Numbered from the stretch's first letter, positions 29,542-57,372 are shown. The stretch: 64,000 bases of DNA from Oikopleura dioica (GCA_907165135.1 OU015568.1:8680001-8744000); one strand, 5' to 3'. Notes: generated by a model not told the origin, from the letters alone. Numbers and translations: made by a program.

Positions 29542-30101
29542 GTCAATTTGATGCGTAAATGTCCTAAAAATAAACCGTTCAGAAAATCTCAACTCTGCCC
29601 ATGGGCGATGCCAGTATGATTTAGATAAGAATTTCGTCTGCAATAAATCGTAAAAACAGCCTGCAAATTTATAAACAAACTACCCTTTGTTTCATTCCAA
29701 ATGTTTTTTATTCAGATAGTTGAATTCCAAAGCTGGGTACAGTGAAAACAAGAACAGAATAGAAAAAAGTGCACAAAATTTGAAACATCAATCGCAGTAC
29801 AAAAACAGGTTCTCACATAATCACATTTTTAGAGAATAAGTGGGAGTGCTGCCCAACTGGTGGTTTTTATTTTTCAACCCATGGGCCCGAGCACGACTTT
29901 TTCTAGAGCACTGACGGCGCTTGAAGCTGCCAAGTCTAAAGTGCAGGTGAAAAGACGACTGCGGATTTTGTTACCCAAGGATTTTTTGATAACCAGCTAA
30001 TTTGGGATTGTGGAAATCATATTCCATCTTTTTTAATTAATTTGTGATTATGCGGGGATAAATAAAGTTTACAGGAAAGATTGTACAGTCATAAAAAGGT
30101 A

Positions 30102-33100
30102 TTAAACCTTGATAGTGTCTCGAACAATCTGCTTGTATTCGACCTTGTAGCTGTTGATTTTGGCTCCGCCATCGTCCTCTGGCTTGTTCCATTCAACAGC
30201 AACATATCCATCTCCGACGTCGGTGACGTTGATTCGGCCAACTGGTCCAGGTGGTCCAGAAGCTCGGAAGCTTTCATCAAGAGCGCAAGCTGGGCCTTCG
30301 CCGAATTCGTTGACGGCCTTGACTCGGAAGAAGTATACGAGGCCTCGGACAAGTCCTTCGATTCTGAAGTTCTGTCGGGTGACATTTTCAGCGGCGGTTT
30401 TCCATGCTTTCTTGGTGGATTCCTTCATCTCAATGACATAGTTGCTGACAATAGATCCACCATCGTTGACGGGAGCGTTCCATTGAAGAGTGACGTAGTC
30501 GGTGCTCTTTTCCTTGATGCAGATGTCGGTAGGAGCAGAGGGAGTATCCTGAATGACGACGTTGACGGTAACTTCTTTGGATCCAGCAGAGGAGGAGATG
30601 GTGACAGCGTAAGCGCCGGAGTCGTTTCGGTTGGGCTTCTCAACTTCGAGTCGAGTGCTGCCCATGCCAGATTCGACAAAGACGCGATCTGGGAGTGGCA
30701 TGTTGTCCTTCTTCCAGGAAATGGATGGGGCAGGGTTGCCAGTAACCTTTCCGTTGATACGAAGAGGAACTCCGGCCTTGACCTTGAGAGCCTGCTTGAT
30801 AGAGCAGTCCAAGTCGATCTCGGGAGCGATCATGATGATCTGCGGCTTGTATGGATCGAAGAGAGCAACAGCTTCGGACTCAGCGGTATTGTTGAAAGCA
30901 ATAACTCGGAAGAGATAGTTGTTCAACTCAGAGAGGCCGGGAATGGTGTAGTGAAGGTTGGTGTTGCGGATGATGATCTTCTGGTACTCAGCTTCGACAC
31001 CTTCAGCGGGCTGAATAGCGTACTCAACAGCGTAGCCAATAATATCGCTGCCGCCATCGAAGTTAGGCTTGTTCCAGCCAAGAGTGACAGAAGTGTTGGT
31101 AGAAGTCTCGACGCGAATATTGGTTGGTCCAGATGGTGGATAAATAGGATTGACCATGTGCACATATGGTGATGGATCAGAAGGTTCAGATTGGCCAGCA
31201 GCGTTCTCAGCAATGACTCGGAATTCATAAGATCGCTCCATAGCGAGTCCGGAGATTCGAGTTCGGCATTCGGAGACACGCTTTTTGACGGCTCGCACCC
31301 ATCGCATACCGTCCTTGTCTCGTTTCTCGACGACGTAGTTTTCGATCTCAGCGCCACCAGTTTCGACAGGTCGAGTCCAGGTGAGAGTGAGAGAGCCATC
31401 GACAACATTTGAGGCTTCAGGAGAGCCAGGCTTGCTAGCGGGATCGTATGGGTTCTTGGCCTTGGCGGCCTTGGACTCAATAACTTCACCCTTGCCGTAC
31501 TTGTTGACACCAGCGACTCGGAAGATGTATTCGTTTCCTTCGAAAAGGTTAGCGCACTTGTAGCTGGTAGAAGTGATGTCAGAGCCAACCAAAGTCCAGG
31601 CGAGATGAGATGTCTCTCGTTTTTCAATGGTGTAAGAAGAAACATCAGCTCCGCCATTATCAACTGGCGCGTCCCAGCTCAATCGCATAGTAGTCTTGTT
31701 CATAACCTTGACAGTGAGGTGGTCACATGGTCCAGGTCGGGAAAGAACTCGCACTCGGATCTCGCCATTGTCGATACCGCCAATGTTTCGGGCAGAAACG
31801 CCATAAGTGCCAGTATCAAGTCGGGAAGCTTCCTTGATCTCGATCCAGCTTTCTCGCTCATCGTTTCGGATTCGAACGTTCTTGGTTTCAACAAGATCTT
31901 TGCCATCCTTGGTCCACTTAACTTGAGGAAGAGGAGTTCCTTGGAGATGAACCATGAATTTAAGGCTGTCGCAGGCCTTGGCCATGACAACATCCTTGTA
32001 CTTGGCATCAATCAAGACCTTGGGAGAAGTGATTTCATCCTTAGGCGTGATCTCATCAGAGGACTCGGACCATTCAGAAAGAGTGTTGGCAGCGTTCTTT
32101 GCCTGAACTCTGAATCTGTAGGCAGTGTTTTCTTCGAGGCCAGTGACGTTGAATCGGGTCTCGAGAACGTTGGAGAAGTTACATTTGAGCCATCGGCCCT
32201 TGTTACCTTCTTCTTCCTTTTCAATGGTGTAGCCAGTAATCTTGGCACCGCCATCGTACGCAGGCTTTTCCCAAGCGATCAAAGAAGATGTTCGACCAAG
32301 TTCAAGAAGTTCGGGCTTGCCGCATCGCTCGCATTGATCCTTGCACATGATTCCTTCAGAAGCTTGAGACCACTTAGATCTACCGGCTCGGTTTTCAGCG
32401 CAAACTCGGAACTCGTAAGTAGCACCATCAGCAAGGTTGCTGACTTGAGCTTGGAGAGCCTTGAGTGAGCCTCGAACGGCAGAAGTCCAGACGAGAGCAG
32501 ATCGCTCCTTCTTTTCCAAGAGGTAGCCAGTGATCTTGTCACCACCGTTGTTTGCTGGCTCGTTCCACTTGACCTTGATCCAGTTTCGGCTAGCTTCAAC
32601 GACAGTTGGGGCACTTGGTGCATATGGAGCTCGGAATGGCCACTCAGCCTTCAAGTTCTGAGAGACGAGAGGATCAGATCTACCGAATCGGTTCTCAGCA
32701 AAGACTCGGAACTTGTACTCAGAACCAGCGCGCAAGTTCTTGGCCTTGTAGCAAGCTCGAACAACAGTACCAGCGATTTCAACCCATTGGTCAGAGTCGG
32801 ACTCGCGGCATTGGACGATGTAATTGGCAATCTGAGCGCCGCCATCTTCCTTTGGTGCAGACCAGGTAAGAGTAGCGGAAGTGGTATTGACGTCGCTAAA
32901 CTCAATTGGTCCAACGGGGATAGATGGTCGATCCAAGACGACGAATCGGAGCTTCGATTGTTTCTCACCGGCAGATGATTTAGTAGTAAGAACGAATTCG
33001 TCGGCATCAGATCGGACAGCATCGGCGATCTGGAGTCGAGTGTAGAGAATGCCGTTCTCAGTGAACATCTCTGTGTTTGCTCGCTGAGTTTCTCTCCAGG

Positions 33101-36100
33101 TTCCCTCGGAGTTGTTCCATCGAGTGACTGGAGCTGGCTTACCGATGACTGGGATTCGGAGGTCGACGTTCTCGCCAGCGCGACAAGTGTAGCTGGACAT
33201 GTAAAGTTGACGCATATCCAAATCAGGAGCAATGATGTGGTCCTTGGCGACTTCAGTCAATCGAGTCTCAATAGGCTCAGAAAGGCCGATTGCGTTCTTG
33301 GCCATAACTCGGAAAACGTAACCAGCACCCTCCTTGAGGTTGGTGCAGGTGTAGGTGTTCTTGGTTGTGGTGCCCTGTTCGAGCCAGGTTTCAGCACCAA
33401 CAACAGAGAGGGCCATTTCCACAACGTAACCGGTGACAGCAGATCCTCCATCAGAAAGTGGCTTAGTCCAGGCGATCTGGCCAGTAGATTTGGTCATCTC
33501 GACAACATCGATAGACATTGGCTGATCAGGCTTAGAAGCAATGATCGATGGCTCCTCGGTGACGCCTTCTTTACCATCGCCGTACTTGTTGACACCTCTG
33601 ACTCGGAAGAAATAGCTTTCGCCAGTGATAAGAGATTTGACAACGCACATTTCTCGCTCGCACTTGTCCGTGACAGTAGTCCAAGATTTTTTATCAGCGG
33701 TCTTCTTCTCAACAATGTAGTGAGTGATAGGAGCACAACCGTCATTGGCAGGAGTATCCCAAGTGAGCTTGACATCATCCTTTCCGATATCGGCAACGCG
33801 AACGTTGAGTGGAGCAGATGGCGCATCAATAACTCTGACGGAGACAGCGCCATCTTTAGATCCAGCTGCAGATTCCAAAACAAATTCGTATCGTCCAGAA
33901 TCAAGAACAGTAGCTCGCTCGATAATAAGAGTAGATCGACCCTTCTGAGTGTCGACAACAGCGAGCTCGTTCAAGTCGCCTTCAGCTTTTCTCCAGGTGA
34001 TAGTTGGCTCTGGTCGACCCTTCATCTTCAAGCTGATTCGGAACGTAGCGCCGGCCTTGACCATCATAGTGCGCTGGCATTCGACATCAAGCTCGAACAT
34101 TGGTGGCTCGACAATATCGTCGGCAGTGACCCATCCAGAGTCCTGAGAAGCGTCAGAAGCCCCAACATCATTACAAGCAATAACTCGGAAAGCGATCATC
34201 TTCTGATCAAGTCCAGTGATCTTGTACTCAGTATCTGGAATTGGAAGTGCAGTGACTGGCTGGTAATTGATATCATCAGCAGCAGCGTCTTGAACAGCCA
34301 TTTCGACGATGTAGTTCTTGATTGGAGCACCGCCATCATGAATTGGCTTAGCCCATCGAAGATGGATCATATTCTTGTTAGAGTCAACAATCTTTGGCGA
34401 TCCAGGCTTGGATGGTGGGTAGAGTGGATCCTGAGCAGTTCCGTAGTCAGAAGCTTCAGATACAGCGCCAACACCGGCCTTGTTAATAGCAGAAACGCGG
34501 AATTCGTACTCGTTACCGGCCTGGAGGTGAGCAACACGAAGTCGACACTCGTGGACAGCGCTCTTGTGAGCGCGGACCCAGTTCATGTTCTTCTTGTTAC
34601 GACGCTCAACCTGGTAGCCAGTGATTTGGCTGCCACCATCATGAGTAGGTCTATCCCAAGTGATGGTGATAGAGTCAGACATGGTTGCGGCGATCTTTGG
34701 CTTTCCAGGAGCTCTTGGAACAGTGAAGTCGTTCTTGATGACAACAGCTTCGGATTCTTTAGGATATCCGGTTCCGTATTTGTTTGCGGGACTGACTCGG
34801 AAGATGTACTGGTTATCCTTGATTAATCTTTTGATGGTGCAGTTGGTCTGTCTGCAATCATCATCGACAGTAGTCCAAATAAGTCGGCTTGTTTCTCGCT
34901 TTTCGACAATGTATCGCTGAATTTCGCTGCCACCAGTTTCCTTTGGTGGAGACCACTGAAGTCGGACTCGTTCTTCAGTGACACCGTAGACCTTAACTTG
35001 GTCAACAGCGCCAGGTCGGTCGAGAACGGCAATATGGCAAGACAAGCTAGCAGTTCCGTAGTGGTTGGAAACAGTGCAGTTGTAATCGCCAGCGTGTTTA
35101 AGCTTTGAATCCTTGATCAAGAGCTCAGAGGTCTTGGGGCCGTTGGTGATCTTGACAAAGTCGTTTTCGCGGACATCAGCGTTACCGTGCATCCAGGCAA
35201 CACGTGGGATAGGCTTGCCGCTGATCTTAGCGGTAATCAAGATATCCTGGCCAGCTCGGACAGTGCAGCCCTCAAGAAGAGTCTGATCGAATTCAACAGA
35301 AGCTGGAATGTAGACATCCTTAACGTCGATTTCGACAACTGGCTTGCAAGGCTTGGAAGAGCAGCCAGCAGTGTTGCGAGCGATAACTCGGAAGTCATAG
35401 CAGCAGCCATCGATGAGGTCGGTGACGGTGTAGTGGAGGGTCTGGACGCCGGTGAAGTTGGCCTTCTGCCAGATCTTTCCGGGATGCTTTCGGTATTCGA
35501 TGTCGTAACCAGCAAGTCGGTGACCACCAGTGTACTTAGGGCCAACCCAAGAAAGAGAAACAGTAGAAGCGGTGATGTCATCAACCTTGAGATCATAGGG
35601 CGCATCGCAAGGATCAAGAGCCTTAGCGCACCAAGTTGGATCAGAAGGTTCAGAAGCACCGGCAATGTTGCAAGCACGAACTCGGAACTGATACTCGAGG
35701 CCTTCGATGAGACCGTTGACTCGGCCTTCAGTCGATCTGGTTTCACATCCTTCCTTCCAGAATTGAGAGTTGTTTTCTCTAAATTCAACGATGTAGTGAG
35801 TGACTCGTGAGCCGCCAGATTTTCGTGGAGGGCTGAAGTCGATGGTCATAGATTCCTTGTGAATCTCGCTAATGGCAACATCCTGTGGAGCAGATGGAAC
35901 GGCGAATGGATACTTGGCAAGAGCAGTTTCAGTCACAACAGGGGTAGAAAGACCGATTCGGTTCTCAGCCATGACGCGGAAAGTGTATTCGAGTCCAGCA
36001 ACAAGGCCAGAGATTCGGCAATTAGTTCTGCTGACAGAATTCGACACCAAGTTCCAGTTGCAGGAGTCGTTGTCTCGCTTTTCAACAGTGTAGCCAGAAA

Positions 36101-42100: not shown

Positions 42101-45100
42101 TGCCTCGAGAGTGAATCTTGACATCTCGAACAGGCATTGGCTTAACGAATGGATCGACCATGCAAGTTGGCTTTTGGTTTCGACGGATGGACCTTGACCG
42201 CACTTGTTTTCGGCAGTAACTCGGAAGAAGTAGTCGTGACCTTCAGAGCCTCGAGCCTTGATCATTCGCTTGGTGCCTTCGGAAGAAACCAAAGACCAGC
42301 CCATGAAGCTGAATCCTGGTTGCTGTGGCTCTCGCATTTCAAGGACGTAGTTGATGACTTCAGTGCCACCTTCATCCTCTGGAGCATCCCAAGAAACGAC
42401 GCAGCCACCCTTGGAAGGATAGCTAGTTCGGATATTTCGGCATGGGCCGGGCTTGTCAAGAATATTGATGGAAATCTTTCCACTAGCCTCGCCAGCTTCG
42501 TTCTTTGCAGTGACAATGTAATCACCAGAATCGGATCGAACAGAGTCCTTCATCTTCATCTCAACACCGAGGGGAGTTTCTTTGAAGAAGAATCGTTCAG
42601 ATTCAATAGGTTTGCCCTTGTAGCTCCAAGTGACTTCTGGCGCGGGTTTGCCTCGGATGATTGCTCCGACCTTGACGATGTTACCGACTCGGTAGTTGTG
42701 GACACCTCGGACACCTTGTTCAACTTCCACCTCGGGCTCGATGAGGATATCTTTGCACTGAACAGTTTCAGAAAGCTCAGCCCACTCAGATTCGCTAAAT
42801 TCAGTGACAGCACAAACTCGAAGTCGGTACTTCTGCTTGTCCTTGAGACCGTTGATTTTGTAGGTGTTAGAGAGAGAAGCGTTCTGATTAGCTCGTTTCC
42901 AGTCTTCCTGTCCATACAGCTGGAGCTCAAGGAAATAACCAAGAATTGGTTTTCCTCCATCCTTGAGTGGCTTGTTCCAAGTAGCGGTGATAGAATTCTT
43001 AGAAACATCAAGAATTTTGATGTTGAATGGAGCGCCTGGAGCAGTAACTGGTCGCTCAGCAGTAAAAACTTCAGAAGGATCAGATGGCTTAGACTTTCCA
43101 CCAGCGTTCTCGGAAGTTACACGGAACTGATATTGTCGTCCGTCGAAAAGTCCCTTCACTCGCATAGTGTTACCAAGAATTGGCTCGTGATTGCACTTGG
43201 CCCACTTGCCAGTTTCCTTGTCGAGTCGCTCAATAGTGTAACCAAGGATTGGGCTTCCACCGTCGGACTCAGGAGTTTTCCAGGTTACAGTGCAAGCAGA
43301 TTCGATGATATCGACAACCTTTGGTGGGAGAGTCTTCTGTGGTGGTTCGAAAGAGTGCTTTGCAATGACAGGCTCAGAAATGAGTGGTTCAGAGACGCCA
43401 TATTTGTTCTCAGCTCGAACTCGGAAGAGATAAGACTTGCCGGCAATAAGTCGGGGGACCTTGATTTTGTTTCGGCTGCCCTTTGAAGAAACCATTGACC
43501 ACTGTTCTTTTGGTGGTGGGAGGCCTTCCTTGACAGGCTTTTGCTGGAGTTTCTCGACGATGTAGTTAGAGATTGTGTTTCCACCATCGTCTTTTGGTGC
43601 TTGCCAGCCGATAACAGCGTATTCTGGAGTAACTTCCTCCATTTGAATGGGTCCAACTGGGGGTTCTGGTCGATCAAGAACAGTGCAGTGAATGACAGCA
43701 GTCTTTGCACCAGCATCGTTCTTGGCGGTCAAAGAGTATTCACCGGTGTCGCCTCGCTGAGCCTTTTTGATCAAAAGGATAGAAGATCCCTTTTCTTCTT
43801 GAATCTCAACTCGGTTCTCCTCAGTGCTTTCAAGTGGCTCGCCGCTAGCACTTGCCCAGACGGTTTCCGGAGCAGGAATACCCTTTACCATGGCGGGCAC
43901 TGTGATCGTAGAACCAGCTCGAACAGTCAAGCCTTCAAGGATCTTCACGTTGATGTTGATTGAAGGAGAAATGAGCTTAGCAGTTGGAACAACTGGAATA
44001 GTTGAGTCAGGTCGACCTTCACCGGCTTCGTTGATGGCTCGAACTCGGAATTTGTAGGCAACATTTTCCATGAGTCCAGTAACGGTGCACTTGAAAGTAG
44101 AGACGGTCTTGTAGTCTTCCCATGCGCTGATCTTTGTCTGCTTCTCGCCGTATTCATCTTCGACTTCTTCTTCAGTGCACATTTCGATTCTGTAAGATGT
44201 GACTGGAGAACCGCCATCTCGACCAGGTCGGTTCCATGCGAGGGAGATGTTATCCTTGTCGATATCAGTGACTTCCAAGTTCTGTGGGATAGATGGAGGA
44301 TGGATTGGGTTTCGAGCGATTACTTCATCAGTCTCAGCTGGTCGACCCATACCGAAGCAGTTCTCTGCGAAAACTCGGAATCGGTAAGTTTCTCCTTCGA
44401 TCAAATATTTGACCTCAATGTTGTTCTTCTTGTGAGAAAGAGCAATAGGCTTCCAATCCTGATTTCCATCGCCCTTGGCAATTCGCTCAACTCGGTAGTG
44501 GCTGATAACAGTTCCGCCATTGTCAGATGGAGTCTTCCAAGAAAGTCGAAGAGACTCAGCGTGAACTTCAGTGATTTTCATGTCACGTGGTGGCGATGGA
44601 ATGTCAAGAACGGACACAAAACAGGAAGCAACCTTCTTGCCCATAGAGTTTTCGGCCTGAATGCAGAATCGGCCAGTGTGAGCTCGCTGAGCGTCGACGA
44701 TGATGAGTTTAGTTCGGTTGTCCTGAGTCTGAATAAGCTTAGACTCAATCTCTTTATCGCCATTGACGGGGTCGTTCTTGATCCACTTGACAGTTGGCTT
44801 TGGAGTACCAGAAATAACGGCTGAAAGGACAAGCTCGCTACCAGCCTTGACTACTCGTTCGTTGACCATGTTGCCATCGGGAGTGATTTCTGGTGGAGCA
44901 AGCTTTTCGACAACAACAACAGTATCTCGCATAACTCCGGGCTCGGAAGTGCCAGCGGCATTAACAGCCTTTACTCGAATGTAGTACTCGAACGACTCAG
45001 TAAGGTCAGGAATGAGGAAGCTTGTAGTCTTCTGAGTTTCAGAAGTACACCAGGTCTTCCAGACGTCAGTGCCGACCTTGTTTGTTTCAACAATGTATCC

Positions 45101-48100
45101 ATCGATGGCGCAGTTTCCATTGTGTCGTGGTGGGTTCCAGCTAATGGAAACGGTGCTGCCCTTGATAGCATTTACACCAATGTTGATTGGCATAGATGGT
45201 GGGTTGATTGGATCTCGGCAGAGCACAGCCTTGGATGGAACAGATGCCGGAGAAAGACCAATGGAGTTTTCAGCCATAACTCGGAATTCGTACTCGTTTC
45301 CTTCGAGCAGTTCTCGAACGGTGTACTTGTTCTCAGTGATGAGCTCCTTTGTGACTCGGATCCATCGCTCGGATTGAGTCTCTCGTTTCTCAACTCGGTA
45401 GTTGAGAATTCGCTTGCCGCCATCATATGGCTTGTTCCATTCGAGAAGAACACGGTCCTTGAAAGTTTCCTTGGCTCGGACATTGTCAGGGGCATCTGGG
45501 ATCTTGTATCGATCTCGAATGACCACAGTGGGAGTGTCAACAGGATCGGAAAGACCGTAGCTGTTTTCAGCCATGACTCGGAACTGGAATTCTCCGTTTT
45601 CTCTGAGCTTAGAAACTCGGATTTCGTTCTTGAGGCAGGCGTTGTTGACAGTGAGCCACATCATTCGCTGCATATCCTTCTTTTCAACGACGTAGTTGGA
45701 GATTGTCTCACCGCCGTCATCTTCAGGATCGTCCCACTTGAGGAGAACAAACTCACGAGTGACTTCAACAACGTCAAGGTTGCGGACAAGAGCAGGCTTG
45801 TCAGCAATGACGACTTCGACTCGTGCGGATTTCTCACCAGCACTGTTGGCGACCTTGATATTGTACATACCAGAGTCTTTTCGCTCGGCGTTGTAGATGG
45901 AGAGCATTGAGGTAGTTGCGGTGTTCTTTGTTCGGATTCGATCAGCAGCAGGAAGCTCGTGGTTGTTATGAGTCCATGTGACTCGTGGAGAAGGCTTGCC
46001 ACCGATAAAGGCAGGAATCTGGAGAGAGTTACCAACTCGGCAGATAAGCTTTTCTCGGCAATCAAGGTCGAGCTTTGGCATAATGATTAGATCTCGGCAG
46101 ATGCAAGGCTTGGTGGGGAAGGATGGCTTTCCAGCACCCATTTCGTTGAAAGCAATGACTCGGAATTCGAAGTTGTCACCTTCAGAGAATCCAGTTAAAG
46201 TAGCCTGGCAGTCAGAGAAAGCTTTTTCGGAGGCTTCAACGTATCGCTCCTGACCGACTCGTCGTTTTTCAACAACGTAGTGAGTGATTGGAGCACCACC
46301 ATCGAAAGCAGGAGTTTTCCAGCTAAGAAGAACTCGATCTCGCATGACATCTTCATACTTGAGCTCTTCAGGTCGAGCAGGAGTGCCGACAGGATCTCGA
46401 GAAGTAATTGGAAGAGCAGTCTCAAGGAAAGGTCCAACGCCCATGACGTTTTCAGCGGCGACTCGGAACATGTAGCTCTCATCAGGCTGCAAGCCCTGGA
46501 TGACAATCTTTGTTCGAGTGACAGACATCGAGACCTTTGTCCAGGATCGTCGAGAAGATTCTCGCTTTTCGACAATGTAGTTAGTGATTTCAGTACCACC
46601 ATTGTCTTCTGGCTTCTGCCATTCAAGCGTGACTGAATCCTTGACGATATTGGTGCAGTTAACTGGGCCAACAGGGAGACCAGGAACGGACAAAACGTTG
46701 ACGTTGATGTCGGCAGAGATTGATTTCTCGCCAGCCTGAGCTGTGATTGTGTAGACACCAGCGTGTTCTCGCTCAGAAGATCGGATGGTCAAAGTGTGGT
46801 TAATGACTGAGCTGTCGATTCGAGCAAGTTCTGGTACATCTTCTCCCTTGAATTTCCAGGAAACGGTTGGCTCTGGTCGACCAGTGACATAAGCAACAAG
46901 TCGAAGCTGCTTGCCGTTCTTGACAGTCAGGCCATCCTTGAGAAGAGCATCGAGTTTGATTTCAGGGTCGATCTTGATTTCTTCAACAACGACGTATTCT
47001 TCAAGAGTAGCTGGTTCAGACTGACCGGCTTCATTGACAGCCAAGACTCGGAACTTGATCTTTTAGATCGGTCGAGATCCTTGACAGTAACGTCATGGCT
47101 GCGGACTTCATGGCCGTAGACCTTCTCCCAAAGTTCCTCGGGCTCCTTTTCAGGATCTTCTGGAACGGTTCGAGTACCTTCGTAGTGTTTTTCAATGAAA
47201 TAGCCTCGGACCTTTGATCCGCCATCAGCCTCAGGCGAGTTCCATCGAAGATTGACAGTGCTGTCTGTCTTGTCATGGACGGCAAAGTTTCTTGGCTCAC
47301 TTGGTGGATGAATTGGTGGTCGGGCAATAGCACCAAGAGAAGGCTGAGAGAATTCAGAAGTACCAGCAGCATTGACAGCAGCAACTCTGTAAAGGTACTC
47401 TGTGCCCTCGTTAAGACCTCGAACTCGATATTCTTCGTTGGGAATGAGCTCATGAACGACTCGAGTCCATTTTCGCTGGATTCGAGTTCGCTTTTCGAGA
47501 ATGTACCCATTGATAGCAGCTCCGCCGTTGTCACTTGGAGGATCCCATCGAACAGTCATGGAATCTCGAAGAACGCCATCGACGAGTGGTGGTTCCATTC
47601 GGCCAGTGACTTCGCACAAGTTCTTCGCGACAAATGGCTCAGATTTGAGGTAAGGACCTTGGCCGTACTGGTTGACAGCAGCGACACGGTAGATGTAGTG
47701 CTTGCCCTTGTGAAGCTCTGTAGAAGTAACTTCGCAAGATTTGAGCTCTTCACCAACTGGAGCCCAGTACTGTCGGTCAGTGACACATCGTTCAACGATG
47801 TAGTGGCTGATGTGACATCCACCGTCATCGACTGGAGGAAGCCAAGTAATAGACTGCGAGGAAGCAGTGCAGTTTGCAAGAGTGATTGGGCCAGAAGGTG
47901 CACCAGGCTTGGAAAGAATGACGACCATAATCTGCTTAGAACCAACGCCAGCGGCATTAGTTGCGCGAACGGTGTACGATCCCTTGTCGTCTCGGACACT
48001 CTCGTCGATAATGAGGTTACTGGAGCCAACCTCATTCTTCACCTTGACTCGTGGATCAGTAATTGGCTGATCGTTCTTGAGCCATTCAACCTCCGGAATC

Positions 48101-51100
48101 GGGTTACCGGTGATTTTTGCGTTGATATCGAGCTTCATGTTGTTCTCAATTTCCTTGAATCCGAGAACTTCGATTCCAGGGAAAATAATGTCGTCCTTGC
48201 AGGTAACGGGACCGACGACGTTGGATGGTCTTGACTCACCGTAATCATTGATAGCAATTACTCGGAAGGAAGGAGTCGAGCCTGGCTTAAGGCCCTTGAC
48301 TGTGTACTCGGTATCGGTAATGATGACCTTGTTGCAGGCTTCCCAGACTTCAAGATCTCGTTTAGTGAGTCGTCGCTGCTTGAGAGCTCGTCGCTCAGGA
48401 GATTGAGTACCATCGTTGTTTCGAGGCTTGGTCGCGAGATAATCTTCGTATGTAATTCGGTGCTCAGAGGCGACCATTGGTGGATGCTGACCGTCGAATT
48501 CCATCATTGGAAGAGAAGCAGGGGCAGATTTACCCTTGGCGTTGACAGCGATGATACCGAAAGTCCATTCGCCTTGGGCGATGCCGGTGACCTTGTATCG
48601 AGTATCGTGGACAACATCGAACTCTTCCCACTGAGTAGAACCGCCCTTCATACCAACAACAATGTAGCTGCTGATAATGCCAGCTTTCTTTGGCTGAACC
48701 CAACCGAGGGTGATATTGTCGATACCAGAGTCCATTACAGAGACTGGTCCAGGTGGGCTAGAAACATCAGTTGGTCCAGCTTCACCATCAGCGGGCTTGA
48801 CTTCAGCGGCAGCCTTGACAGCAGCTTCCAATTTTTCACCGAGAGCATCGTGAGCTTCGTCTTGGAAGAACTCATCGGCAGAGATTCGTTTCTTGAGCAT
48901 TTCGACCTGATAAGTGGTGATTGGAAGATTACCAGTGAATTCTGGAGCCTTCCAGGTGAGAGAACAGGTCTTTGAAGTGATCTTGTTGATCTTGAGGTGA
49001 AGTGGTGGCTCAGAAAGACCAACTGGATCTCGTGCGATGACTGGGTCAGTAGTATAGACGAATTCACCCTGGCCGACCTGGTTAACAGCAGAAACTCGGA
49101 AGAAGTAAGACTCATTCTCGAGAACGTCATTGCACTGGTAGGTGAGACCGCCAATAACGGATTCGACTCGAGTCCATCCTCGCATATCTTCTCGTCGCTT
49201 ATCAACAACATAGTGAGAGATTCGAGCACCACCGTCGAGTGCTGGTGGCTCGTACTGAAGTTTGACCGACTTCTTTGTGACACCGACGACCTGAAGCTTC
49301 TGTGGGTTGCCGGGAGTATCGAGAACGATAACTCGGCAAGCGCACTGGCGAACACCACCAGCATTCTTAGCAATCAATGTGTATTTGCCAGAGTGCTTTC
49401 GGTTAGCAGCTGGGATAATGAGAGTGGAAGTTGAATCAGTAGACTCAATCTTTGCATCTTCGCTAATTGGCTGGCTCTCTTCGAATTGCCACTTCTGAGT
49501 AGCAGTTGGTCGAGCGTCGATGGTAGCTTTCACTCGGAGAGTGGATCCAGAATGAATAACCAAAGCGTCTCGGAGACCAGCATCAATGCTGATAAGTGGA
49601 GCTTCGATAAGTTCTCGGCATTCAATTGGAGGAGTGGAGAACGAGAATGATGATTCACCAGCCTTATTCACAGCCTTCACTCGGAACTGGTACTTGAAAC
49701 CCTTTCGGAGATTGTCCTTGGTGAACATAGTCTGCTTGATGAAATCATCATTATCGTAGTTCTTCTGAGCAACCTTGGCGCGGACTCTCTGGGAAGTCTC
49801 ACCGCCACCAAGGCCAAGAGATTCCTTGAGTTTCATCTTCTTGAATGCATCGGCAGCAGTTTCTTTCTGTTCATCAGTAAGATCGCCTTCGATGTTATTT
49901 TCGGCAGCCCAGGCTTTAATAAATTTGCCTTCTTCCTCAGCCGCAGCTTTTTCTTCAGCAGCTTTAGCTGCTTCAGCGGCCTTGGCCTTTTCCTCCTCGG
50001 CCTTGGCCGCCTTAGCAGCTCGATCTTCCTCAGATTGGTATGAGACAACTTGCCAGGCGCAGGTAATCTCGTCCATCATTTCCATGATGTAACCAATGAG
50101 CGGAGTTCCACCAAGCTTGCTTGGTTGAGACCAAGAGAGAGAAATAGAATTGTCAGTAGTGTCGTCAACCTCTGGTTTGCCGGGAGTAGATGGAGGGAAG
50201 ATGGGATCAGAGGCGAGGGCGTATTCAGAAACACCACTGACTGCACCAGTTCCAGCCGCATTGACAGCAGATACTCGGAATCGGTACTCAATGCCTTCGA
50301 TGACATCAGTGTATCGGAATTCGCATTTTTGCATTGGTGGCTTGGTGATCGGAGCTCGCTGAACTTTTCGCCATCGGATGTTGTCAGTGTCCTGGACTTC
50401 GAGCCAGTAACCTTCGATGTGCGCGCCACCGTCGTTCTTTGGTGGATTCCAGGTCACGATGATGAAATCCTTTCGATTCTCTTCGATAGTGGGGGTGCTT
50501 GGAGCATCGGGAACAACGTAAGGGTTCTTAGCGACGACTGGACCGAGTTCAGCCCATTCGCCAACACCGAATCGAGACTCAGCTGCAACTCGGAAGTGGT
50601 ATTCAACTCCTTCTTGAAGCTTGGTTACTCGGTATTTGGTTTCGACAACAGTCTGAGAGCAGCTGATCCATTCGAGTTTGCGACCTTCTCGTCTTTCAAC
50701 AACGTAGTTCATAATGGAATCACCACCATCATCAGAACCATCATCCTCTGGTGGTCGCCAATCAAGCTGAGCACTGTCCGCAGTGACATCATCAATGGTA
50801 AAATTGAGTGGAGGAGAAGCGACGCTGTTGACATCGAGCTGGACTCGGCAGAACTTGCTACCGTGAATATTGACAGCTCGGCAGATGTAGAAACCGACAT
50901 CGTCTCGAGTACATTTTCGAATGACGAGGTTGTTGTTGTCGCCGATAACGTGGAGCTCATGATGTTCTGGTTCCTGGCCCTCAGGAAGATCTTTGGGAGT
51001 CTCAGTAATGAGCCGAGGTCCATCAAGAGACTCGAAAGTCCAGGTAACGTGAGCTGGTGGCACAGCGTGGACGTAAGCCGGAACAGAGACAAGATCGCCC

Positions 51101-54100
51101 TTGTAAGCGGTGATTACGTTGCGAACACCGACATCAATGTTGATAATTGGCTCACAATCGTCTTCCTTGGAGGTGAGAATCTGAGTCATAGCAGGTTCAG
51201 ACTCGCCAACATCATTGACAGCTTTGACACGGAACTGATACTTTTCCATAAAGACCAACTTTTCGACCTTATATTCGATAGCATCGGTAATGATCTTGGG
51301 TGGCTGGATGAGCAAATTATTGCATGGTTTCCAGAGTTTCTCCTCCGCCTCAGCTTCGGCAGCAAGTCGCTCCTTTTCAAGGCGCTTTTGCTCTTTGACG
51401 TAGGCTTTTCGATCTTCAGGAGACATGGACTCAAGGTCGACTTCTGGCTCGGGAGTGTCGGGCTTGACTTCTTCGACTTCTTCAGCTGGAGCTTCTTCGC
51501 CTTCAGTTGCCTCCTCGCCTTCTTTAGGCTCTGGTTTCTTTGGCTTCTCTTTCTTGGGATAGTGTCGCATGTCAACAATGTATCCCTTGATTTTGGAACC
51601 GCCATTATTTCGTGGAGTGACCCACTGGAGAACGAGGTTGTCGTCGAGCTTGTTGATGACCTTGACGTGCTCAGGTCGTCCTGGAGGATGAAGGGGATCT
51701 TGGCAAACAACTGGTGTTGTCTCAGCCCATTTTGAGCGGCCTTGAGCATTGACAGCGCAAACTCGGAAGGCGTAAGTCTGAGTTTCAAGCACAGTGTTGA
51801 CTTCCATGCTGAGTTTCTCAGTCTTGCCACATGGAAGCCAAGCATGCATCGACATGTCACGTCGCTCTACAACGTACTCAGTGACGAGAGAACCGCCATT
51901 ATCCTGAGGCTTGTTCCAAGCGACCTGGATGAAGTCTTTCGTGACAGTAGCGGGTCGGGCGTGCTCTGGTGGAGATGGAACGTCCAAGATGTTCAAGTTT
52001 GTGGTAACGTTCTTGCTGCCGACGCAGTTTCGCGCGGTAATCTTGTAGTTACCGTGATGAGATCGCTGAGGGCGTCGGATGTACATTTCGAGTCGACCGG
52101 TAACCTGATCAGTAGAGATTTCGATCTCAGGGGCGTTTTCGCTATCAAGAATCTTATCACCATGCTTGATAATGATTTCTGGGAAGGGTCGTCCGGTAAC
52201 GGATGCCTTGAGCCAAAATCGGTTGTTAGCCATGTGTCGTACAGATTCACGCTCGAATTCTTCGTCAAGTTTGATAAGAGGAATCTCAAATCGATCCTTG
52301 GCGATGACCTCTTTGATGAGAGCGGGCTCGGATTCACCAGCCTTGTTGACGGTCTTCACTCGGAAAGTTACCTGAGCATGCTCTTTCAAATCAGTGGCAT
52401 TGAATTGGCACTCTTTGATCGGCTCGGTAGTAAGAGCAGACCATTCGTTTTCTTCCAGAAGCTGCTCGACAGTATATCGAAGGTTTTCCTTGCCGACGGC
52501 ACCGTCATTTTCAGGAGCGTTCCATTCAAGTTGAACAGAGTTTTTGGTAGAATCAGAAACTCGAACAACGGGCTTGCCAGGAGCGTAAGTTGGATCTTCG
52601 ATAGCAGTTGGTGCAGTTGGGTTAGAGGGCTTTGATGAGCCAGCTTCGTTGAAAGCAATGACTCGGAACTGATAAGTTCTGCCGGCGAACAAGTTCTCGT
52701 TGATGAAGTAAGAGGTGTCTTCGATCTTCTTTCGGACAACCTTGATGAACTTCTCTCCTTGGTCCGACTTTTTCTCGAGGTAGTAGCCGAGAATTGGACT
52801 TCCACCGTTAGCGGGTTCAGTCCAATTGACTCGACATTGTCCGACGAGAATGTCAGTAAGGACAGGGACATCAGGCTGTGCTGGAGGATCAAAGGGCAGC
52901 GATGGCTTGTAAATTCGAGACCAGAGCCATGGTGAGTGTCCGAGCTTGTTTTCAGCGGCGATTCGGAACTGGTAGGTCTTGTCGTCGCGAAGATTGGTAG
53001 CGCGGTACATGGTTGTAGTGATGTTAGTTGCAACAACAGTCCAGCCAAGAGCTTGTCGCTCGAGTTCTTTTCGCTGAAGAGTGTAGCCCGAGATCATAGC
53101 TCCACCATCATCCTCAGGCTCGTTCCACTCAAGAGTGATGGCGTTGTTCCATGGGTCAGAGTAAGTCCATGGTTCCTGAGGAACACCGGGAACGTCCAAA
53201 ACATTCATGTTGACGATAACATAGTTTCGTCCTTGGTTATTCTCGGCAATGATCAAATATCGACCTCGGTTCTTTCGAGTGCAGTTCTTGACAATGAGCT
53301 CGGAATGACCATTCTTCGAATCTTTTTTGGTCTGAGAGACGGTGACTTTGTCGGAAGATTCGAGAAGCTTTGGCTGCGATTCGCTGAAGAGTCGCTGGAG
53401 AAAGATTTCATTCTGTTCCGCAACAGTAAGGGCTCGGTTAGGATCCTTAGCTCGTGCTTCGGCTTCAGCGGCTTCTCGGTCAAGATCAGCTTGAGATTTT
53501 CCATCTTCATCTCGGAAAGTGATGACGGCATCGGTGAAAGAGTTAACACCCTTGTAGCAACCGAATCGACCTGCATCAGTAAGTCGAGCGCCAGTAATGG
53601 TCAAAGTTCGCCTGAGACCTTCAGCGGAAGCGATGTATTTCTCGCCCAAGTTAAGCTCTTTGTTATCTCGCTTCCAGACAACAGCGGCGTCCTCATCCTT
53701 GACTTCGACGGTAAGCTCAACCTTTTCTTCGGTAATAGGGAAGTCCTTGGCTTCCAAGAAAGTGGAGAAAGCAGCACCCTTTTGTCGCTGTGGTGGAAGT
53801 TCTTCTTTTTGCCCCTTCTGGACGATCTTGTTAGCGCCACCGGCTTCGTCACCTTCGTAACCTTCATCAAGGTTGTCGATTGTAGGGGCGCTAACGTGAG
53901 TCAAGAGCTCTGGTGGAATATCTTCAGGCTGGACAATACCCAAAATGGCAGAGAAGATGTCAAGAGCTCGCTGCTCGGAAGCTTGAAGACTCTGTCCCTC
54001 CTCATCGATATGATACCACGACACTTTGGCGTAAGGGTTACCAAAGACGTTGCATTCGATTTTCAAATCCCGACCAGCTCGAGCTTCGAAAGTTTCCTGA

Positions 54101-56655
54101 GCTTCTTTAGACTTGATAACTTCGATTTGTGGAAGAGCAAGTGGATCAGAGGCTCGAATAGCAGTTGGCCAGTAAGCCCATTTGGAGTGGAACTCGCGGT
54201 TGATCGAGGCGATTCGGAACTCGTAGTCCTTGCCTTCGATGAGTTCTCGGCACTGGTATTTCGTACCGTCCAGTTGGCCGCAGAGAAGGTTCCAGACTTC
54301 AGTGTCTTTCTCGGCGAATTCGAGGCAATATCCAATGATAGCTGCTCCGCCATCTCGGTCAGGTCGGCTCCATCGGAGAGTGACCGACGATGACGTAACA
54401 TCCTTGGAAATCAGATCCTGTGGTGGCTCTGGTGGATCGACGGGGTCAATAGCCTTGGTATTTTCGCCAGAGATGAGTGGCTCACCGGCACCGACCTTGT
54501 TGTGCGCGACAATTTTAAAGGTGTAAACTGTGTCAGTGATAAGCTCCTCGACTTTCCACTCGCACTTAGTAACCTCGGGATTGACAAGTCCCCAAGTTCG
54601 GCGTCCCTCTTCTTGCTTGAAGATGGAGTAATATTCGATTGGGCATCCACCGTCGTCCTGTGGTGGAGTCCAGGTGAGTTTGCAAGTAGATTTGGTGACT
54701 TCGCCGATCTGAAGGTTCTGTGGAGCACCAGGTCGGTCCTGAACAATGACACGGCAAGTGGCATAAATCGTATCGATCTTATTCTCAATAGCAGCGCAGT
54801 ATCGACCCTGATGTTCTCGTCGAACAGCAGCCACAAAGATAGACGATTCGGCAGATGAAGATTGAAGTCGGATTCCGAGCTCTTTCTTGAAATCGCGTTC
54901 ATCCTTCTGCCAGGTAAGTGTGGGCATTGGAGATCCACCGAATGGAACTCGGATGCGCAACTTTTGTCCAGCAATGAGAGTGACATTCTCGGCCGAGATT
55001 TTGTGCCATGGGCTGTTGTCGGGGTCCTTTGGCTCAACTTCAGCGGAGGCATCCGATGGCTGAGACATACCGGCGCAGTTATAGGCGACAACACGGAATT
55101 TGTATTCTCGGCCAGATCGGAGGTTGGTGACGTTACCCTCAGTTTCGTCGCCCTTGGTGGCGGCGCATCGAGCCCATTCTTCAGTACCATCGGCCATGAC
55201 CATGTTTCGCTCAATGTAGTAGCCGAGAATGTCAGATCCACCATTGTCAGCGGGCGCTTTCCACTTAAGAGAGACAAAGGAAGCGGCAATCTGGACAAAC
55301 TGGACATCAAATGGTGGGGATGGAGGAGAAAGTGGATCCTGGATCATAACATATTCAGTAGGCTGGGAGACTTCACCGATACCAGCTTCGTTCTTGGCGT
55401 AGATTCGGAATCGGCACTCGGCCTTTTCAGTGACATCGTTGACAATAGCTTGCTTAGAATCGCCAGGGACGGTTGAAACGAGTTTCCACTTGGGAGTACC
55501 CTTGTCCTGGCGCTCAATGCAGTACTCAGTGATTTCAGTACCACCGTTGAAGATTGGTTCTCTCCACTTGAGCTCGACAGCTTCAGCGGTGATATCCATG
55601 ATTCGAAGAGATCGAGGAACTCCAGGAGGATCAAACATGCACTTGGCGGTGATAGGGTCGAGATTTTCATGCCAGTCAGAGATACCGGCAATATTGTAGC
55701 AGTGGACGCGGAAAACGTAGTCCATGCCTTCAGTCAAATCTGGAACATGGAGGTTGGTTTCGTTGACATCAACAGCGATTTCCTTCCACTGCTTGGATCG
55801 GCCAGCGCGCATTTGCACTGCATAGCCGAGGATTGGAGCGCCACCATCATTCTCAGGGACGTCCCACTCGAGCGAGATAGAGCTTGGAGTGGTGCCGACA
55901 TTCTTGAGAGCTCGTGGTGGCGAGGGTCGTTTCTGGTCGGGTCGGGGCTGACAGATTTCGGAAGCCTTTGATGGCTGAGATCGACCGGCATTGTTCACCG
56001 CAACAACTCGGAATTGGTATTCCTTCTTCATTGTGACAAGATCGCGGACGGTGAACTCGTTGGCCTTGACCTGAAGCTCCCAAGGAGAGAAGTCATCTCC
56101 CCAGGTGGAACCTTCAGTGATGGTAGACTCGGCGTCATCTTCGAGGGCAGAAATAGCAGTAGCGATCGATTCAGAGTAAAGGGTTTGCACGTCATCGTTA
56201 TCAGCTGCGAGGTCGGCTTCCTCAACTGCTTCGCCTATTTTTAAAATTCAAGATAAGAAAAAAGGACAAAAGAAAACTGATTACCTTCAATGTTTTCTTC
56301 TTCTTCTTCTTGCTGCGCTTCTTCAGCAACCTGTTCGACGGGGTTTTCAGCGGATTCCGGAGCTTCAGCTTCAGCTTCTACGGTTTCCTCTTCATCTCCT
56401 TCCTAATGAGGGTTTTAGAAACTAGATTTATAGAGATGTTTTTACCTGTTGGTTGGAGTTATTGTTAGAATTAGCAGACTGCGCGCTCATCTCGTACCCA
56501 AAAGAGATGTGTGCTGCAGCAGTAGCTGCTGATTCTGGGACGGCATCACGGGTGGCGAGTCCGGAGCCATCGAAAGTGGATTCAGCTTCGACAAGCGCAA
56601 CTTGCTGCTCGTCAGAAGCGTGACATTGTCCCTCCTTGGATGGGGAAAAATGCAT
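30102..56655 (-). CDS. TTN: Titin A-band fragment (about 8,820 aa): end of I/A Fn3 run, D-zone x6, C-zone x3 plus partial
   Basis: ORFs 46927-56190, 41873-47044 and 30102-42203 join after 1-nt homopolymer corrections near 47062 and 42173. Alternating I-set Ig and Fn3 domains in the vertebrate titin super-repeat pattern. Small upstream exons 56446-56693 (ATG 56655) and 56285-56402 splice in frame to a giant exon 56234-30108. Confidence 0.88.
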
Positions 56656-57300: not shown

Positions 57301-57372
57301 TCGGATTAGAATGTTTTCTTGTTTATATGGTTTATTAGAAAATGAAAAGAAAAGTGTATAATACTTGGTTTA

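What the first reader, a model, noticed from the sequence alone, without database searches (positions are those of the whole stretch)
30108..56655. Split titin: an A-band fragment bounded by complementary half-Fn3 domains at both ends
Seen: the N-terminus is an acidic low-complexity leader followed by only strands C'-E-F-G of an Fn3 (WELQVKANEFTVRDLVTMKKEYQFRVVAVNNAGRSQPS, 56082-55951). The C-terminus has only strands A-B-C (30256-30108). Unrelated genes with their own poly(A) signals flank both sides, and no Z-disk, I-band, kinase or M-band exons are present in the window. Both breaks fall at the same Fn3 loop. Established: chordate titin is normally one chain, and Ig/Fn3 folds can be completed in trans by strand complementation. 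Inference: titin underwent gene fission in this lineage. The pieces would be rejoined either as protein (half-domain complementation, possibly aided by acidic head and basic tail) or as RNA (trans-splicing between loci). Head-to-tail self-polymerisation is a third possibility.
Basis: partly seen in the sequence, partly recalled or inferred. Interest (0 to 1): 0.86.

Follow-up and report, generated by a model that had tools for sequence, protein, structure and literature searches.

The report
Split titin gene with half-domain ends

Summary

**The gene.** Window 56655..30105 (minus strand) encodes about 8,820 residues of titin A-band. It has two tiny leader introns and then one 26.1-kb exon.

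**The ends.**
- The protein starts with Fn3 strands C'-G (Pfam fn3 positions 43-82).
- It ends with strands A-C (positions 2-38).

**C-terminal break.**
- Two metagenome contigs from diverged Oikopleura-like lineages (dS about 1) end at the same ...TIKV-TAA.
- The half-domain shows dN/dS of 0 to 0.03.
- A more distant relative reads straight through this Fn3 for more than 10 kb.

**N-terminal break.**
- In Styela the orthologous Fn3 is intact.
- In at least five appendicularian taxa the gene starts the same way.
- Their transcripts carry the Oikopleura spliced leader about 30 nt before the start codon.
- In one relative the upstream titin piece, ending in the matching A-C half and a conserved stop, lies just upstream.
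- In another relative the gene ends at a different Fn3 C-C' loop.

**Reading.** RNA joining between titin loci is disfavoured. Protein-level Fn3 fragment complementation is plausible, because this is the best engineered split site, but it is untested.

**Open points.**
- The partner genes in this genome were not located.
- Two 1-nt frameshifts look like assembly errors.

The same C-terminal stop was noted by the scan on this same window (s1-322977), not on other DNA.

The parts
56656..56695 (-). Predicted spliced-leader acceptor (AG at 56695-56694) and short 5' UTR up to the ATG. An alternative AG lies at 56720-56719.
   Evidence: Sequence. An acceptor 28-38 nt upstream of the ATG is also seen in L014, L012 and L009. 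Transcripts of relatives carry the SL at the orthologous junction. For this genome the acceptor is inferred, not shown.
56774..56781 (-). TATAAATA box-like motif about 80 nt upstream of the acceptor.
   Evidence: Read directly. Weak evidence for an own promoter: the region is AT-rich.
56446..56655 (-). Exon 1: start codon and 70 codons of leader, ending in the N-rich motif (..SANSNNNSNQQ).
   Evidence: The start M(H/K)F and the N-rich motif are conserved in L014/P0298 and in other relatives.
56285..56402 (-). Exon 2: acidic leader. It is flanked by a 43-nt intron (56445-56403) and a 50-nt intron (56284-56235), both GTAA..AG.
   Evidence: The frame is kept across both introns. The spliced product aligns with the intron-less orthologue L014.
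30105..56234 (-). Giant exon 3 (26,130 nt). Contents in order: acidic leader remainder, half Fn3, three Fn3, six Ig-F-F-Ig-F-F-F units, three 11-domain super-repeats, then Ig-Fn3-half Fn3.
   Evidence: best-partner offsets of 11, 22 and 33 domains in the C-terminal part. Best database matches are titin of Ciona savignyi, vertebrates and amphioxus.
55972..56097 (-). N-terminal half Fn3 (strands C'-E-F-G).
   Evidence: Own HMM positions 45-85. Pfam fn3 43-82/84. It is 90-94% identical to most relatives, against about 70% for the next Fn3. It is orthologous to Styela P0094 from residue 255.
30129..30251 (-). C-terminal half Fn3 (strands A-B-C), followed by the tail ..QIVRDTIKV.
   Evidence: Own HMM positions 1-41. 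Pfam fn3 2-38/84. Over the last 48 codons, dN=0 with dS 0.93 against L002, and dN/dS 0.03 against L003.
30102..30104 (-). Stop codon TAA.
   Evidence: It sits at the same position in L002 and L003. The preceding Val codon is GTT or GTC.
29690..30101 (-). 3' UTR with AATAAA at 29712-29707, a signal also present in L003.
   Evidence: Metatranscriptome contigs cover 30095-30364 and 29763-29980.
29873..29987 (-). Conserved hairpin-forming block of about 100 nt inside the 3' UTR.
   Evidence: It is nearly invariant in three lineages whose flanks have diverged. Fold energy is -37 kcal/mol, z = -2.7. Indels fall in loops and no compensatory pairs were seen. No Rfam match.
47061..47064 (-). Frameshift 1: an A4 run inside a continuous Fn3 (..VKDLDRSK/KIKFRVLAVN..).
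   Evidence: One extra base would restore the frame. Probably a homopolymer assembly error; not verified.
42172..42175 (-). Frameshift 2: an A4 run in an Fn3-Fn3 linker.
   Evidence: Total coding length plus 2 nt is a multiple of 3 (my arithmetic). Not verified.
29326..29541 (-). Unrelated small downstream gene (M(R/K)KSA..), also conserved in L003.
   Evidence: No Pfam family.

Best explanation
This is a free-standing gene produced by fission of the ancestral titin gene. It encodes a chain of about 8,820 residues (roughly 1 MDa).

Content of the chain. It covers the start of the A-band: six 7-domain units, the first three 11-domain super-repeats, and the beginning of the fourth.

Shown:
- Both protein ends lie in the C-C' loop of an Fn3 that is intact in outgroups.
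- The C-terminal stop and half-domain have been kept by purifying selection across lineages with saturated synonymous divergence.
- Orthologous mRNAs of several relatives begin with the spliced leader about 30 nt before the leader's ATG.
- In one relative the preceding titin piece ends with the cognate A-B-C half and its own conserved stop, about 0.7 kb upstream of that acceptor.
- Another relative has a further break at another Fn3 C-C' loop, one that carries a nested-domain insertion in this genome.

Inferred course of events:
- Long insertions accumulated in Fn3 C-C' loops.
- A stop, together with a new SL acceptor and ATG, arose inside such an insertion (in-situ fission).
- Genome scrambling later moved the pieces apart.

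Inferred mechanism (about 50% on its own). The separately made chains are rejoined non-covalently, end to end. The A-B-C half at the C-terminus of one chain and the C'-G half at the N-terminus of the next reconstitute one Fn3. This would restore a continuous ruler on the thick filament.

The confidence given (0.75) is for the free-standing fission gene with real half-domain termini. The complementation step alone is about 0.5.
For: Anatomy:
- establish the gene and domain layout.

Titin identity:
- Ciona savignyi titin 43-44% identical, vertebrate TTN giant-exon products 39-42%, twitchins 30-33%.
- 11-domain periodicity is seen.

C-terminal break:
- L002 and L003 are about 83% identical in DNA and 93-94% in protein, with no gaps over 2010 codons.
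- dS is about 1 and dN/dS 0.03-0.04.
- The tail has dN=0 and an identical ..TIKV-TAA; the Val codon is GTT or GTC.
- The UTR has diverged with indels, while the AATAAA and the downstream small gene are conserved.
- P0001/L001/L017 is the positional orthologue (56% identity against 34% for the best paralogous position). It has the whole Fn3 and more than 10 kb of further Ig/Fn3.

N-terminal break:
- Styela P0094 has the intact Fn3, and L009's upstream piece is collinear with P0094 residues 10-248.
- The Tara metatranscriptome unigenes P0279, P0297, P0299, P0300 and P0305-P0308 start with THPIFESDFDCLT.
- That peptide is the translation of the published 40-nt O. dioica SL (PMC6883708).
- P0293 (transcript, SL variant) and P0309 (metagenome contig) are the same from EQTEIAIRKRM onward but differ upstream of it.
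- L012 and L009 share a conserved stop of the upstream piece (..TD(Y/H)G(K/T)S-stop), followed by the acceptor and the ATG.

Species C:
- The gene ends ..SSSEF-TGA in an A-B-C half in at least three independent assemblies.
- The 12 kb downstream holds no Ig or Fn3.

Constraint on the half-domain:
- The N-terminal half Fn3 is 90-94% identical across most taxa, against about 70% for the next domain.

Precedent for complementation:
- An FN3 monobody split in the CD loop between residues 45 and 46 reconstitutes on mixing.
- That split was reported as the most efficient site (PMC11666773, citing Dutta et al. 2005).
Against: - No transcript of this genome's own lineage was obtained for the 5' junction.
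- The laid RNA runs belong to a diverged lineage and map only patchily. One metatranscriptome contig reads just 13 nt past the last Lys codon.
- The partner genes (upstream piece, downstream piece) were not located in this genome.
- Two frameshifts in the window are unexplained other than as assembly errors.
- The relatives are unnamed metagenomic or metatranscriptomic taxa, and L009 has 1.5x coverage with evident errors.
- The AlphaFold model of the N-terminus is of low confidence (mean pLDDT 49) and says nothing on complementation.
- Physical association of the halves is untested. Strong conservation could reflect another binding function.
Confidence: 0.75

Rival explanations
1. The gene is split, but the chains are not rejoined by domain complementation. 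The terminal half-domains would then have another role. They could be conserved docking or regulatory peptides for other thick-filament proteins. They could instead be completed in cis by leader segments such as the conserved YSESIAT..STITEGSEW stretch. Each piece would bind the filament independently.
For: - The stretch just before the N-terminal half is also conserved.
- The C-terminus has no obvious extension.
- Invertebrates manage with separate I-band and A-band titin-like proteins (established knowledge).
- No partner was found in this genome.
Against: - The halves keep the Fn3 core consensus (half-domain HMM scores of 26 and 34 bits).
- They are cut at the loop that works best for engineered complementation.
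- A cognate partner half is retained next door in species B.
- AlphaFold gives no strands for the leader, though at low confidence.
Confidence: 0.25
2. It is one ordinary long titin gene. The window's exons would be cis-spliced through very long introns, containing other genes, to I-band exons upstream and C-zone, kinase and M-band exons downstream.
For: - The last codons overlap a GT (AAG|GTTTAA) in phase 0.
- The reading frame is open from the candidate acceptor at 56694 to the ATG.
- The domain series stops in mid super-repeat.
Against: - The TAA is conserved in three lineages, while the +3 position of the would-be donor is T or C and behaves as a synonymous Val site.
- No downstream acceptor leads into Fn3 coding.
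- Unrelated genes, including ones on the same strand, flank both ends.
- Orthologous mRNAs start with the SL.
- The upstream piece in L012 and L009 has its own conserved stop.
Confidence: 0.06
3. The pieces are joined as RNA, by trans-splicing between titin loci.
For: The organism group has an active trans-splicing machinery (PMC6883708). Both breaks are near splice-like sites.
Against: - What is found on the orthologous 5' acceptor is the ordinary 40-nt spliced leader followed by an own ATG, in at least 8 unigenes.
- The 3' end has a conserved stop and a poor donor.
Confidence: 0.03
4. Head-to-tail self-polymerisation. The C-terminal A-C half of one molecule would complete the N-terminal C'-G half of another copy of the same protein.
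For: The two ends of this one protein are formally complementary halves.
Against: - The two halves derive from different ancestral domains.
- The N-terminal half has a cognate partner on a different gene in species B.
- Species C has the same N-terminus but a different C-terminal half.
Confidence: 0.05
5. The feature is an artefact or a decaying gene: the boundaries are assembly chimeras, or the locus is a pseudogene, as the two frameshifts might suggest.
For: There are two 1-nt frameshifts at A-runs.
Against: - There are about 8,800 codons without a stop in the three frames.
- dN/dS is 0.04 against other lineages.
- Independent metagenome contigs are collinear across the 3' boundary into the UTR and the next gene.
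- The 5' architecture is reproduced in many independent contigs and transcripts.
Confidence: 0.03

Closest known systems
Vertebrate and ascidian titin (TTN), A-band D-zone and C-zone
   Same: It is made only of Ig and Fn3 domains. It has Ig-F-F-Ig-F-F-F units followed by 11-domain super-repeats, and it is encoded largely by one giant exon. The best sequence matches are titin of Ciona savignyi, vertebrates and amphioxus.
   Different: It is a separate gene of about 8,820 residues. It has its own SL-type 5' end and its own stop. Only about 3.2 C-zone super-repeats are present. No Z-disc, PEVK, kinase or M-band parts are present. Both termini lie in mid-Fn3. Several loops carry long insertions and nested domains.
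Invertebrate division of titin functions (Drosophila sallimus and projectin; C. elegans TTN-1 and twitchin)
   Same: Sarcomeric Ig/Fn3 giants that act as separate polypeptides rather than one half-sarcomere chain (established knowledge, not tested here).
   Different: Those are old, distinct genes that begin and end with whole domains. Here an orthologous single chain was cut inside domains, and at different places in different appendicularians.
Engineered split FN3 (monobody) fragment complementation, Dutta et al. 2005 and PMC11666773
   Same: The cut lies in the CD (C-C') loop at about residue 45, giving an A-B-C fragment and a D/C'-G fragment. Those fragments reassemble on mixing.
   Different: That system is engineered from the tenth FN3 of fibronectin. 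Here the cut is natural, lies in titin, and association is not demonstrated.
Donor-strand complementation in chaperone-usher pili
   Same: An incomplete Ig-like fold of one subunit is completed in trans by another chain, giving a non-covalent fibre (established knowledge).
   Different: There a single strand is donated, in bacteria. Here half a sandwich (three strands against four) would be exchanged between giant eukaryotic chains.
SL trans-spliced genes and operons of Oikopleura dioica
   Same: The 5' end of the orthologous mRNAs is the 40-nt SL (PMC6883708). In species B the two titin pieces are adjacent on one strand.
   Different: The intergenic gap in species B is about 660 nt, and it was not tested whether the two pieces are co-transcribed. 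In this window the upstream same-strand neighbours are unrelated genes.

Membership tests
Chordate titin, A-band segment | Ig/Fn3 domains arranged as 7-domain units (Ig-F-F-Ig-F-F-F) | tested here: met
   Domain order from own HMMs shows six such units. Sequence periodicity of 7 is weak.
Chordate titin, A-band segment | 11-domain super-repeat (Ig-F-F-Ig-F-F-F-Ig-F-F-F) | tested here: met
   Three full copies plus the start of a fourth. Best-partner offsets of 11, 22 or 33 domains occur in 18 of 36 domains. Paralogous matches are spaced about 1,090 residues apart.
Chordate titin, A-band segment | Closer to titins than to twitchin, projectin or obscurin | tested here: met
   Ciona savignyi titin 43-44%, vertebrate titin exon products 39-42%, amphioxus titin-like 38%, twitchins 30-33%. 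No formal tree was built.
Chordate titin, whole molecule | One chain containing Z-disc, I-band/PEVK, A-band, kinase and M-band parts | tested here: not met
   Only the A-band part is in this gene. The gene has its own start and stop, and no other Ig/Fn3 coding lies in 64 kb.
Gene fission product | The outgroup orthologue is continuous across each break | tested here: met
   N-terminal break: Styela P0094. C-terminal break: P0001/L001/L017.
Gene fission product | Each piece has its own translation start or stop and its own mRNA end | tested here: met
   The stop is conserved in three lineages. SL-capped transcripts with an own ATG occur in relatives. The upstream piece's stop is conserved in L009 and L012. 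The own-lineage 5' end is inferred only.
Gene fission product | Partner pieces exist as separate genes in the same genome | not testable with these tools
   The rest of this genome could not be searched. Scan notes list no other titin piece so far. The upstream partner was found in species B.
Fn3 fragment complementation | The cut lies in the C-C' (CD) loop, giving A-B-C and C'-G fragments | tested here: met
   HMM positions 1-41 and 45-85. Pfam positions 2-38 and 43-82. The same loop is cut in L009 and in species C.
Fn3 fragment complementation | Both fragments are retained under constraint | tested here: met
   The C-terminal half has dN/dS of 0 to 0.03. The N-terminal half is the most conserved segment.
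Fn3 fragment complementation | The fragments associate and fold into one domain | not testable with these tools
   Only single natural chains can be modelled here. The N-terminal model has low confidence.
SL trans-spliced mRNA | The 40-nt spliced leader sits at the mRNA 5' end, joined at a 3' splice acceptor | tested here: inconclusive
   Met for orthologues in relatives. For this genome only the conserved acceptor and ATG geometry is seen.

The most novel reading that the evidence does not exclude
Appendicularian titin is a multi-chain ruler. Separately encoded segments of about a megadalton would be stitched end to end on the thick filament by natural Fn3 fragment complementation across the C-C' loop. 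Different species would cut at different super-repeat positions. This would be the first natural split-domain junction in a sarcomeric giant.
Probability: 0.45. Interest if true: 0.9.

Novelty: new variant of a known kind. Interest (0 to 1): 0.8.

Why it matters
Titin is the textbook single-molecule ruler and spring of the chordate half-sarcomere. A chordate lineage that cuts it into separate genes, inside domains, conflicts with the one-chain picture in three ways:
- The half-domains are kept under stronger constraint than whole neighbouring domains.
- The cuts lie at the loop where engineered FN3 halves reassemble best.
- The cuts recur at different positions in different species.

It offers a natural test of two questions. 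Does ruler function need covalent continuity? Can domain fragment complementation serve as a native assembly principle?

It also gives a worked example of how gene fission can proceed in a scrambling genome. The steps would be a loop insertion, then an in-situ stop plus an SL acceptor and start codon, then dispersal.

Tried and rejected
- **Laying RNA reads on 27800-31300.** The species-labelled runs are a diverged lineage (90-95% identity) and map only in patches. One metatranscriptome contig passes the last Lys codon by 13 nt. Not decisive.
- **Protein searches with the C-terminal 266 residues and with p3 region 3500-4023, plus the exhaustive representative search.** No same-species protein was found. 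Long titins dominate the last list.
- **Search for an exon continuing from a 30108 donor.** No acceptor leads into Fn3-like coding.
- **Rfam on the 3' flank.** No match.
- **The prokaryote-type promoter and terminator scan.** Irrelevant here.
- **Scan notebook look-ups for other titin pieces in this genome.** None so far.
- **Literature.** No description of a split titin in Oikopleura. One paper merely counts one titin orthologue.
- **AlphaFold of leader plus half Fn3 plus next Fn3, with an 18-row alignment.** Mean pLDDT is 49, so it is uninformative on cis-completion.
- **In-frame cis-splicing path from the upstream piece into the leader in L009.** Considered, then rejected once the better-covered L012 showed a conserved stop in the natural frame.

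Full report
**1. What is in the window**

Three very long minus-strand open frames abut one another: 56247-46930, 47062-41876 and 42242-30105. The two joins are not introns. Each lies inside continuous domain sequence, at a run of four A (47064-47061 and 42175-42172). One extra base at each join would restore the frame.

Adding those two bases makes the spliced coding length a multiple of three, giving 8,820 codons. I read the frameshifts as homopolymer errors of the assembly. This could not be verified.

Upstream of the giant exon lie two short exons, 56655-56446 and 56402-56285. They are separated by GTAA..AG introns of 43 and 50 nt and carry the frame from an ATG at 56655.

**2. Check of the observation**

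Profile HMMs built from the protein's own domains find 65 Fn3 and 24 Ig stretches.
- The first Fn3 hit covers only model positions 45-85.
- The last Fn3 hit covers only positions 1-41.
- Pfam's fn3 model agrees independently, with 43-82 of 84 at the N-terminus and 2-38 of 84 at the C-terminus.

Both ends therefore lie in the C-C' (CD) loop and are complementary halves.

The domain order is: half-F, F, F, F, six Ig-F-F-Ig-F-F-F units, three 11-domain super-repeats, then Ig-F-half-F. In the C-terminal part the best-matching partner of a domain lies 11, 22 or 33 domains away in 18 of 36 cases.

The best database matches are titins:
- Ciona savignyi, 43-44%;
- vertebrate giant-exon products, 39-42%;
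- amphioxus;
- twitchins lower, at 30-33%.

Nothing else in the 64 kb encodes Ig or Fn3 on either strand. tblastn with the relatives' neighbouring titin parts finds nothing outside the gene. The flanking genes are unrelated.

**3. The C-terminal end is real and old**

The last codons read ..ATC AAG GTT TAA. The stop therefore overlaps a possible GT donor, and this had to be resolved.

A scan of JGI metagenome contigs returned two contigs from diverged lineages of the same kind of animal: L002 (from a 21.7-kb contig) and L003.
- They are about 83% identical in DNA.
- They align without a single gap over 2010 and 428 codons.
- Amino-acid identity is 93-94%, dS about 1, and dN/dS 0.03-0.04.

Both end with the same ..QIVRDTIKV followed by TAA at the same position.
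- The Val codon is GTT in two lineages and GTC in the third. This is a synonymous change if it is translated. If it were a donor, it would put a pyrimidine at position +3 in all three.
- The last 48 codons show dN = 0 against L002, at dS 0.93.

After the stop the sequences diverge with many indels. The exceptions are a conserved block of about 100 nt, an AATAAA (window 29712), and the next small gene. All of these are collinear in L003.

A metatranscriptome also holds contigs over 30095-30364 and 29763-29980.

An assembly chimera, a recent pseudogene and a routinely used donor are each unlikely.

**4. The C-terminal break is derived**

P0001 (contig L001) and its cluster mate P0311 (contig L017, 16.9 kb) match the last 345 residues at 56%. 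The next best paralogous position matches at only 34%, so they are positional orthologues. In that relative (species D) the Fn3 is complete, and Ig/Fn3 coding continues for more than 10 kb.

**5. The N-terminal end**

The best match of the first 500 residues is Styela clava titin-like P0094, at 40% against about 33% for all others.

In Styela the orthologous Fn3 is intact. Strands A-C run directly into ..WKEDFITWEANVKTNE.., which aligns with the window's ..WGDDFSPWELQVKANE... Two more Fn3 domains lie upstream.

A protein search with the first 280 residues of exon 3 found about twenty proteins, 65-81% identical, from Tara and other marine data. All have the same architecture:
- a variable leader with an N-rich motif and an acidic run;
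- a conserved YSESIAT..STITEGSEW stretch;
- then the half Fn3.

**6. Orthologous mRNAs start with the spliced leader**

Eight metatranscriptome unigenes of one taxon (species A) begin MG-THPIFESDFDCLT. These are P0279, P0297, P0299, P0300 and P0305-P0308.

The 13 residues are the exact translation of the 40-nt O. dioica spliced leader as printed in PMC6883708. About 30 nt later comes an ATG.

A second taxon (species B: P0293, P0295) has a two-residue variant of the same peptide. For species B, the transcript P0293 and the metagenome-contig protein P0309 belong to one 90% cluster. They are the same from EQTEIAIRKRM onward and differ upstream of it, as expected at a trans-splice acceptor.

So in relatives the mRNA of this gene begins there. 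For the window itself I infer the same. The evidence is the acceptor at 56695-56694, 38 nt before the ATG. That geometry is shared with the closest relative's genomic contig L014, and the start M(H/K)F is conserved.

**7. The partner piece is next door in one relative**

Contigs L009 (12.7 kb, 1.5x coverage) and L012 (7x coverage) are of species B type. They show the following order on the same strand, upstream of the acceptor:
- ..Ig-F-F;
- an Fn3 A-B-C half (Pfam 3-40);
- an E/K-rich stretch;
- a nested Ig split by an intron;
- an N-rich stretch;
- an acidic tail ending ..TD(Y/H)G(K/T)S-stop, conserved between the two contigs;
- about 660 nt of non-coding sequence;
- the SL acceptor, ATG and leader, then the C'-G half.

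The upstream piece is collinear with Styela P0094 residues 10-248, and the downstream piece with residue 255 onward. This is an in-situ fission inside one Fn3.

In the window and in species C, the upstream neighbours are unrelated genes.

**8. A further break in another relative**

Species C is represented by L005-L008 and L010-L011, from at least three independent assemblies.
- The orthologous gene has a short leader and the same N-terminal half Fn3.
- It ends after about 2,470 residues in an A-B-C half, ..SSSEF-TGA.
- The next 12 kb hold ankyrin and zinc-finger genes and no Ig or Fn3.

That break lies in the Fn3 which in the window carries a nested Fn3 in its C-C' loop (p1 residues 2414-2454 and 2629-2674).

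Inside the window's protein, two Fn3 domains carry long insertions in the C-C' loop. A third is split further along the domain. The C-C' loop is thus a hot spot for insertion and, repeatedly, for fission.

**9. Constraint on the halves**

Across 17 relatives' sequences, the N-terminal half Fn3 is 79-94% identical to the window, and mostly 90-94%. The next whole Fn3 is about 70% identical. The C-terminal half has dN/dS of 0 to 0.03. A vestige would not be kept like this.

**10. Mechanism**

Shown: separate genes; real, conserved half-domain termini; the ordinary spliced leader at the 5' end in relatives.

Disfavoured: cis-splicing through long introns, and trans-splicing between titin loci.

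Inferred: the chains are rejoined as protein.
- The precedent is direct. An FN3 monobody cut in the CD loop between residues 45 and 46 gives fragments that reconstitute a functional domain on 1:1 mixing.
- That split was reported as the most efficient one (PMC11666773, citing Dutta et al. 2005).
- I put complementation at roughly 50%.

The main rival is that the halves have another conserved binding role, or are completed in cis. An AlphaFold model of the N-terminus was too poor to bear on this (mean pLDDT 49). Self-polymerisation is less likely because the N-terminal half has a cognate partner on another gene.

**11. What is missing**

- The partner genes in this genome were not located.
- There is no own-lineage evidence for the 5' junction.
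- The two A-runs are unverified.
- The metagenomic relatives are unnamed.
- There is no physical evidence for association.

I found no description of a split titin in appendicularians in the searchable literature.

Noticed in passing
window 47061-47064 and 42172-42175: Two 1-nt frameshifts, both at AAAAG, inside otherwise continuous Fn3 or linker coding. They look like homopolymer undercalls of a long-read assembly. This implies that residual indel errors may affect other gene models in this genome.
   Followed up: partly
window 29873-29987 (minus strand): A block of about 100 nt in the 3' UTR is nearly invariant in three lineages whose flanks have diverged. It folds into a long hairpin (-37 kcal/mol, z -2.7), with indels confined to loops. 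No Rfam family matches and no compensatory pairs were seen. RNA reads of a diverged lineage pile up on it.
   Followed up: partly
window about 51680-51190, 50190-49640 and 49005-48225 (p1 residues 1522-1685, 2019-2200, 2414-2674); also about 54080-53190: Fn3 domains inside the protein are interrupted by long E/K/A-rich insertions. Two of these lie in the C-C' loop and one further along the domain. One insertion contains a whole nested Fn3, and one Ig is interrupted by a nested Ig. The nested-Fn3 site is where species C has a gene break.
   Followed up: partly
window 29326-29541 (minus strand): A small gene encoding a hydrophobic protein of about 70 residues (M(R/K)KSA..) sits between the titin piece and the RRM gene. 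It is conserved in L003 and has no Pfam family.
   Followed up: no
window 57955-58581 and 59344-59646 (minus strand): Two tandem paralogues of a cysteine-rich protein without a Pfam match lie upstream of the titin piece on the same strand. A further open frame (57684-57376) and an AATAAA at 57336 follow them.
   Followed up: no
L001 about 600 and 1984-1986; L009 between 1059 and 1109: The metagenome contigs of relatives carry a frameshift and an in-frame TAA (L001) or a frameshift (L009). The sister contig L017/P0311 reads Glu at the TAA site, so these are assembly or sequencing errors.
   Followed up: partly
L009 1109-2527 and L012 1-431: In species B the upstream titin piece carries a complete Ig domain (split by an intron of about 870 nt) after its terminal half Fn3. 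An N-rich motif follows that resembles the N-rich motif of the downstream gene's leader. This suggests both derive from one former loop insertion.
   Followed up: partly
window 27800-28970 (minus strand): The 5' exons of the RRM/hnRNP-like gene are expressed in the laid runs. They show introns of about 47 nt and about 407 nt, and lineage differences including an 11-nt replacement at one junction.
   Followed up: no
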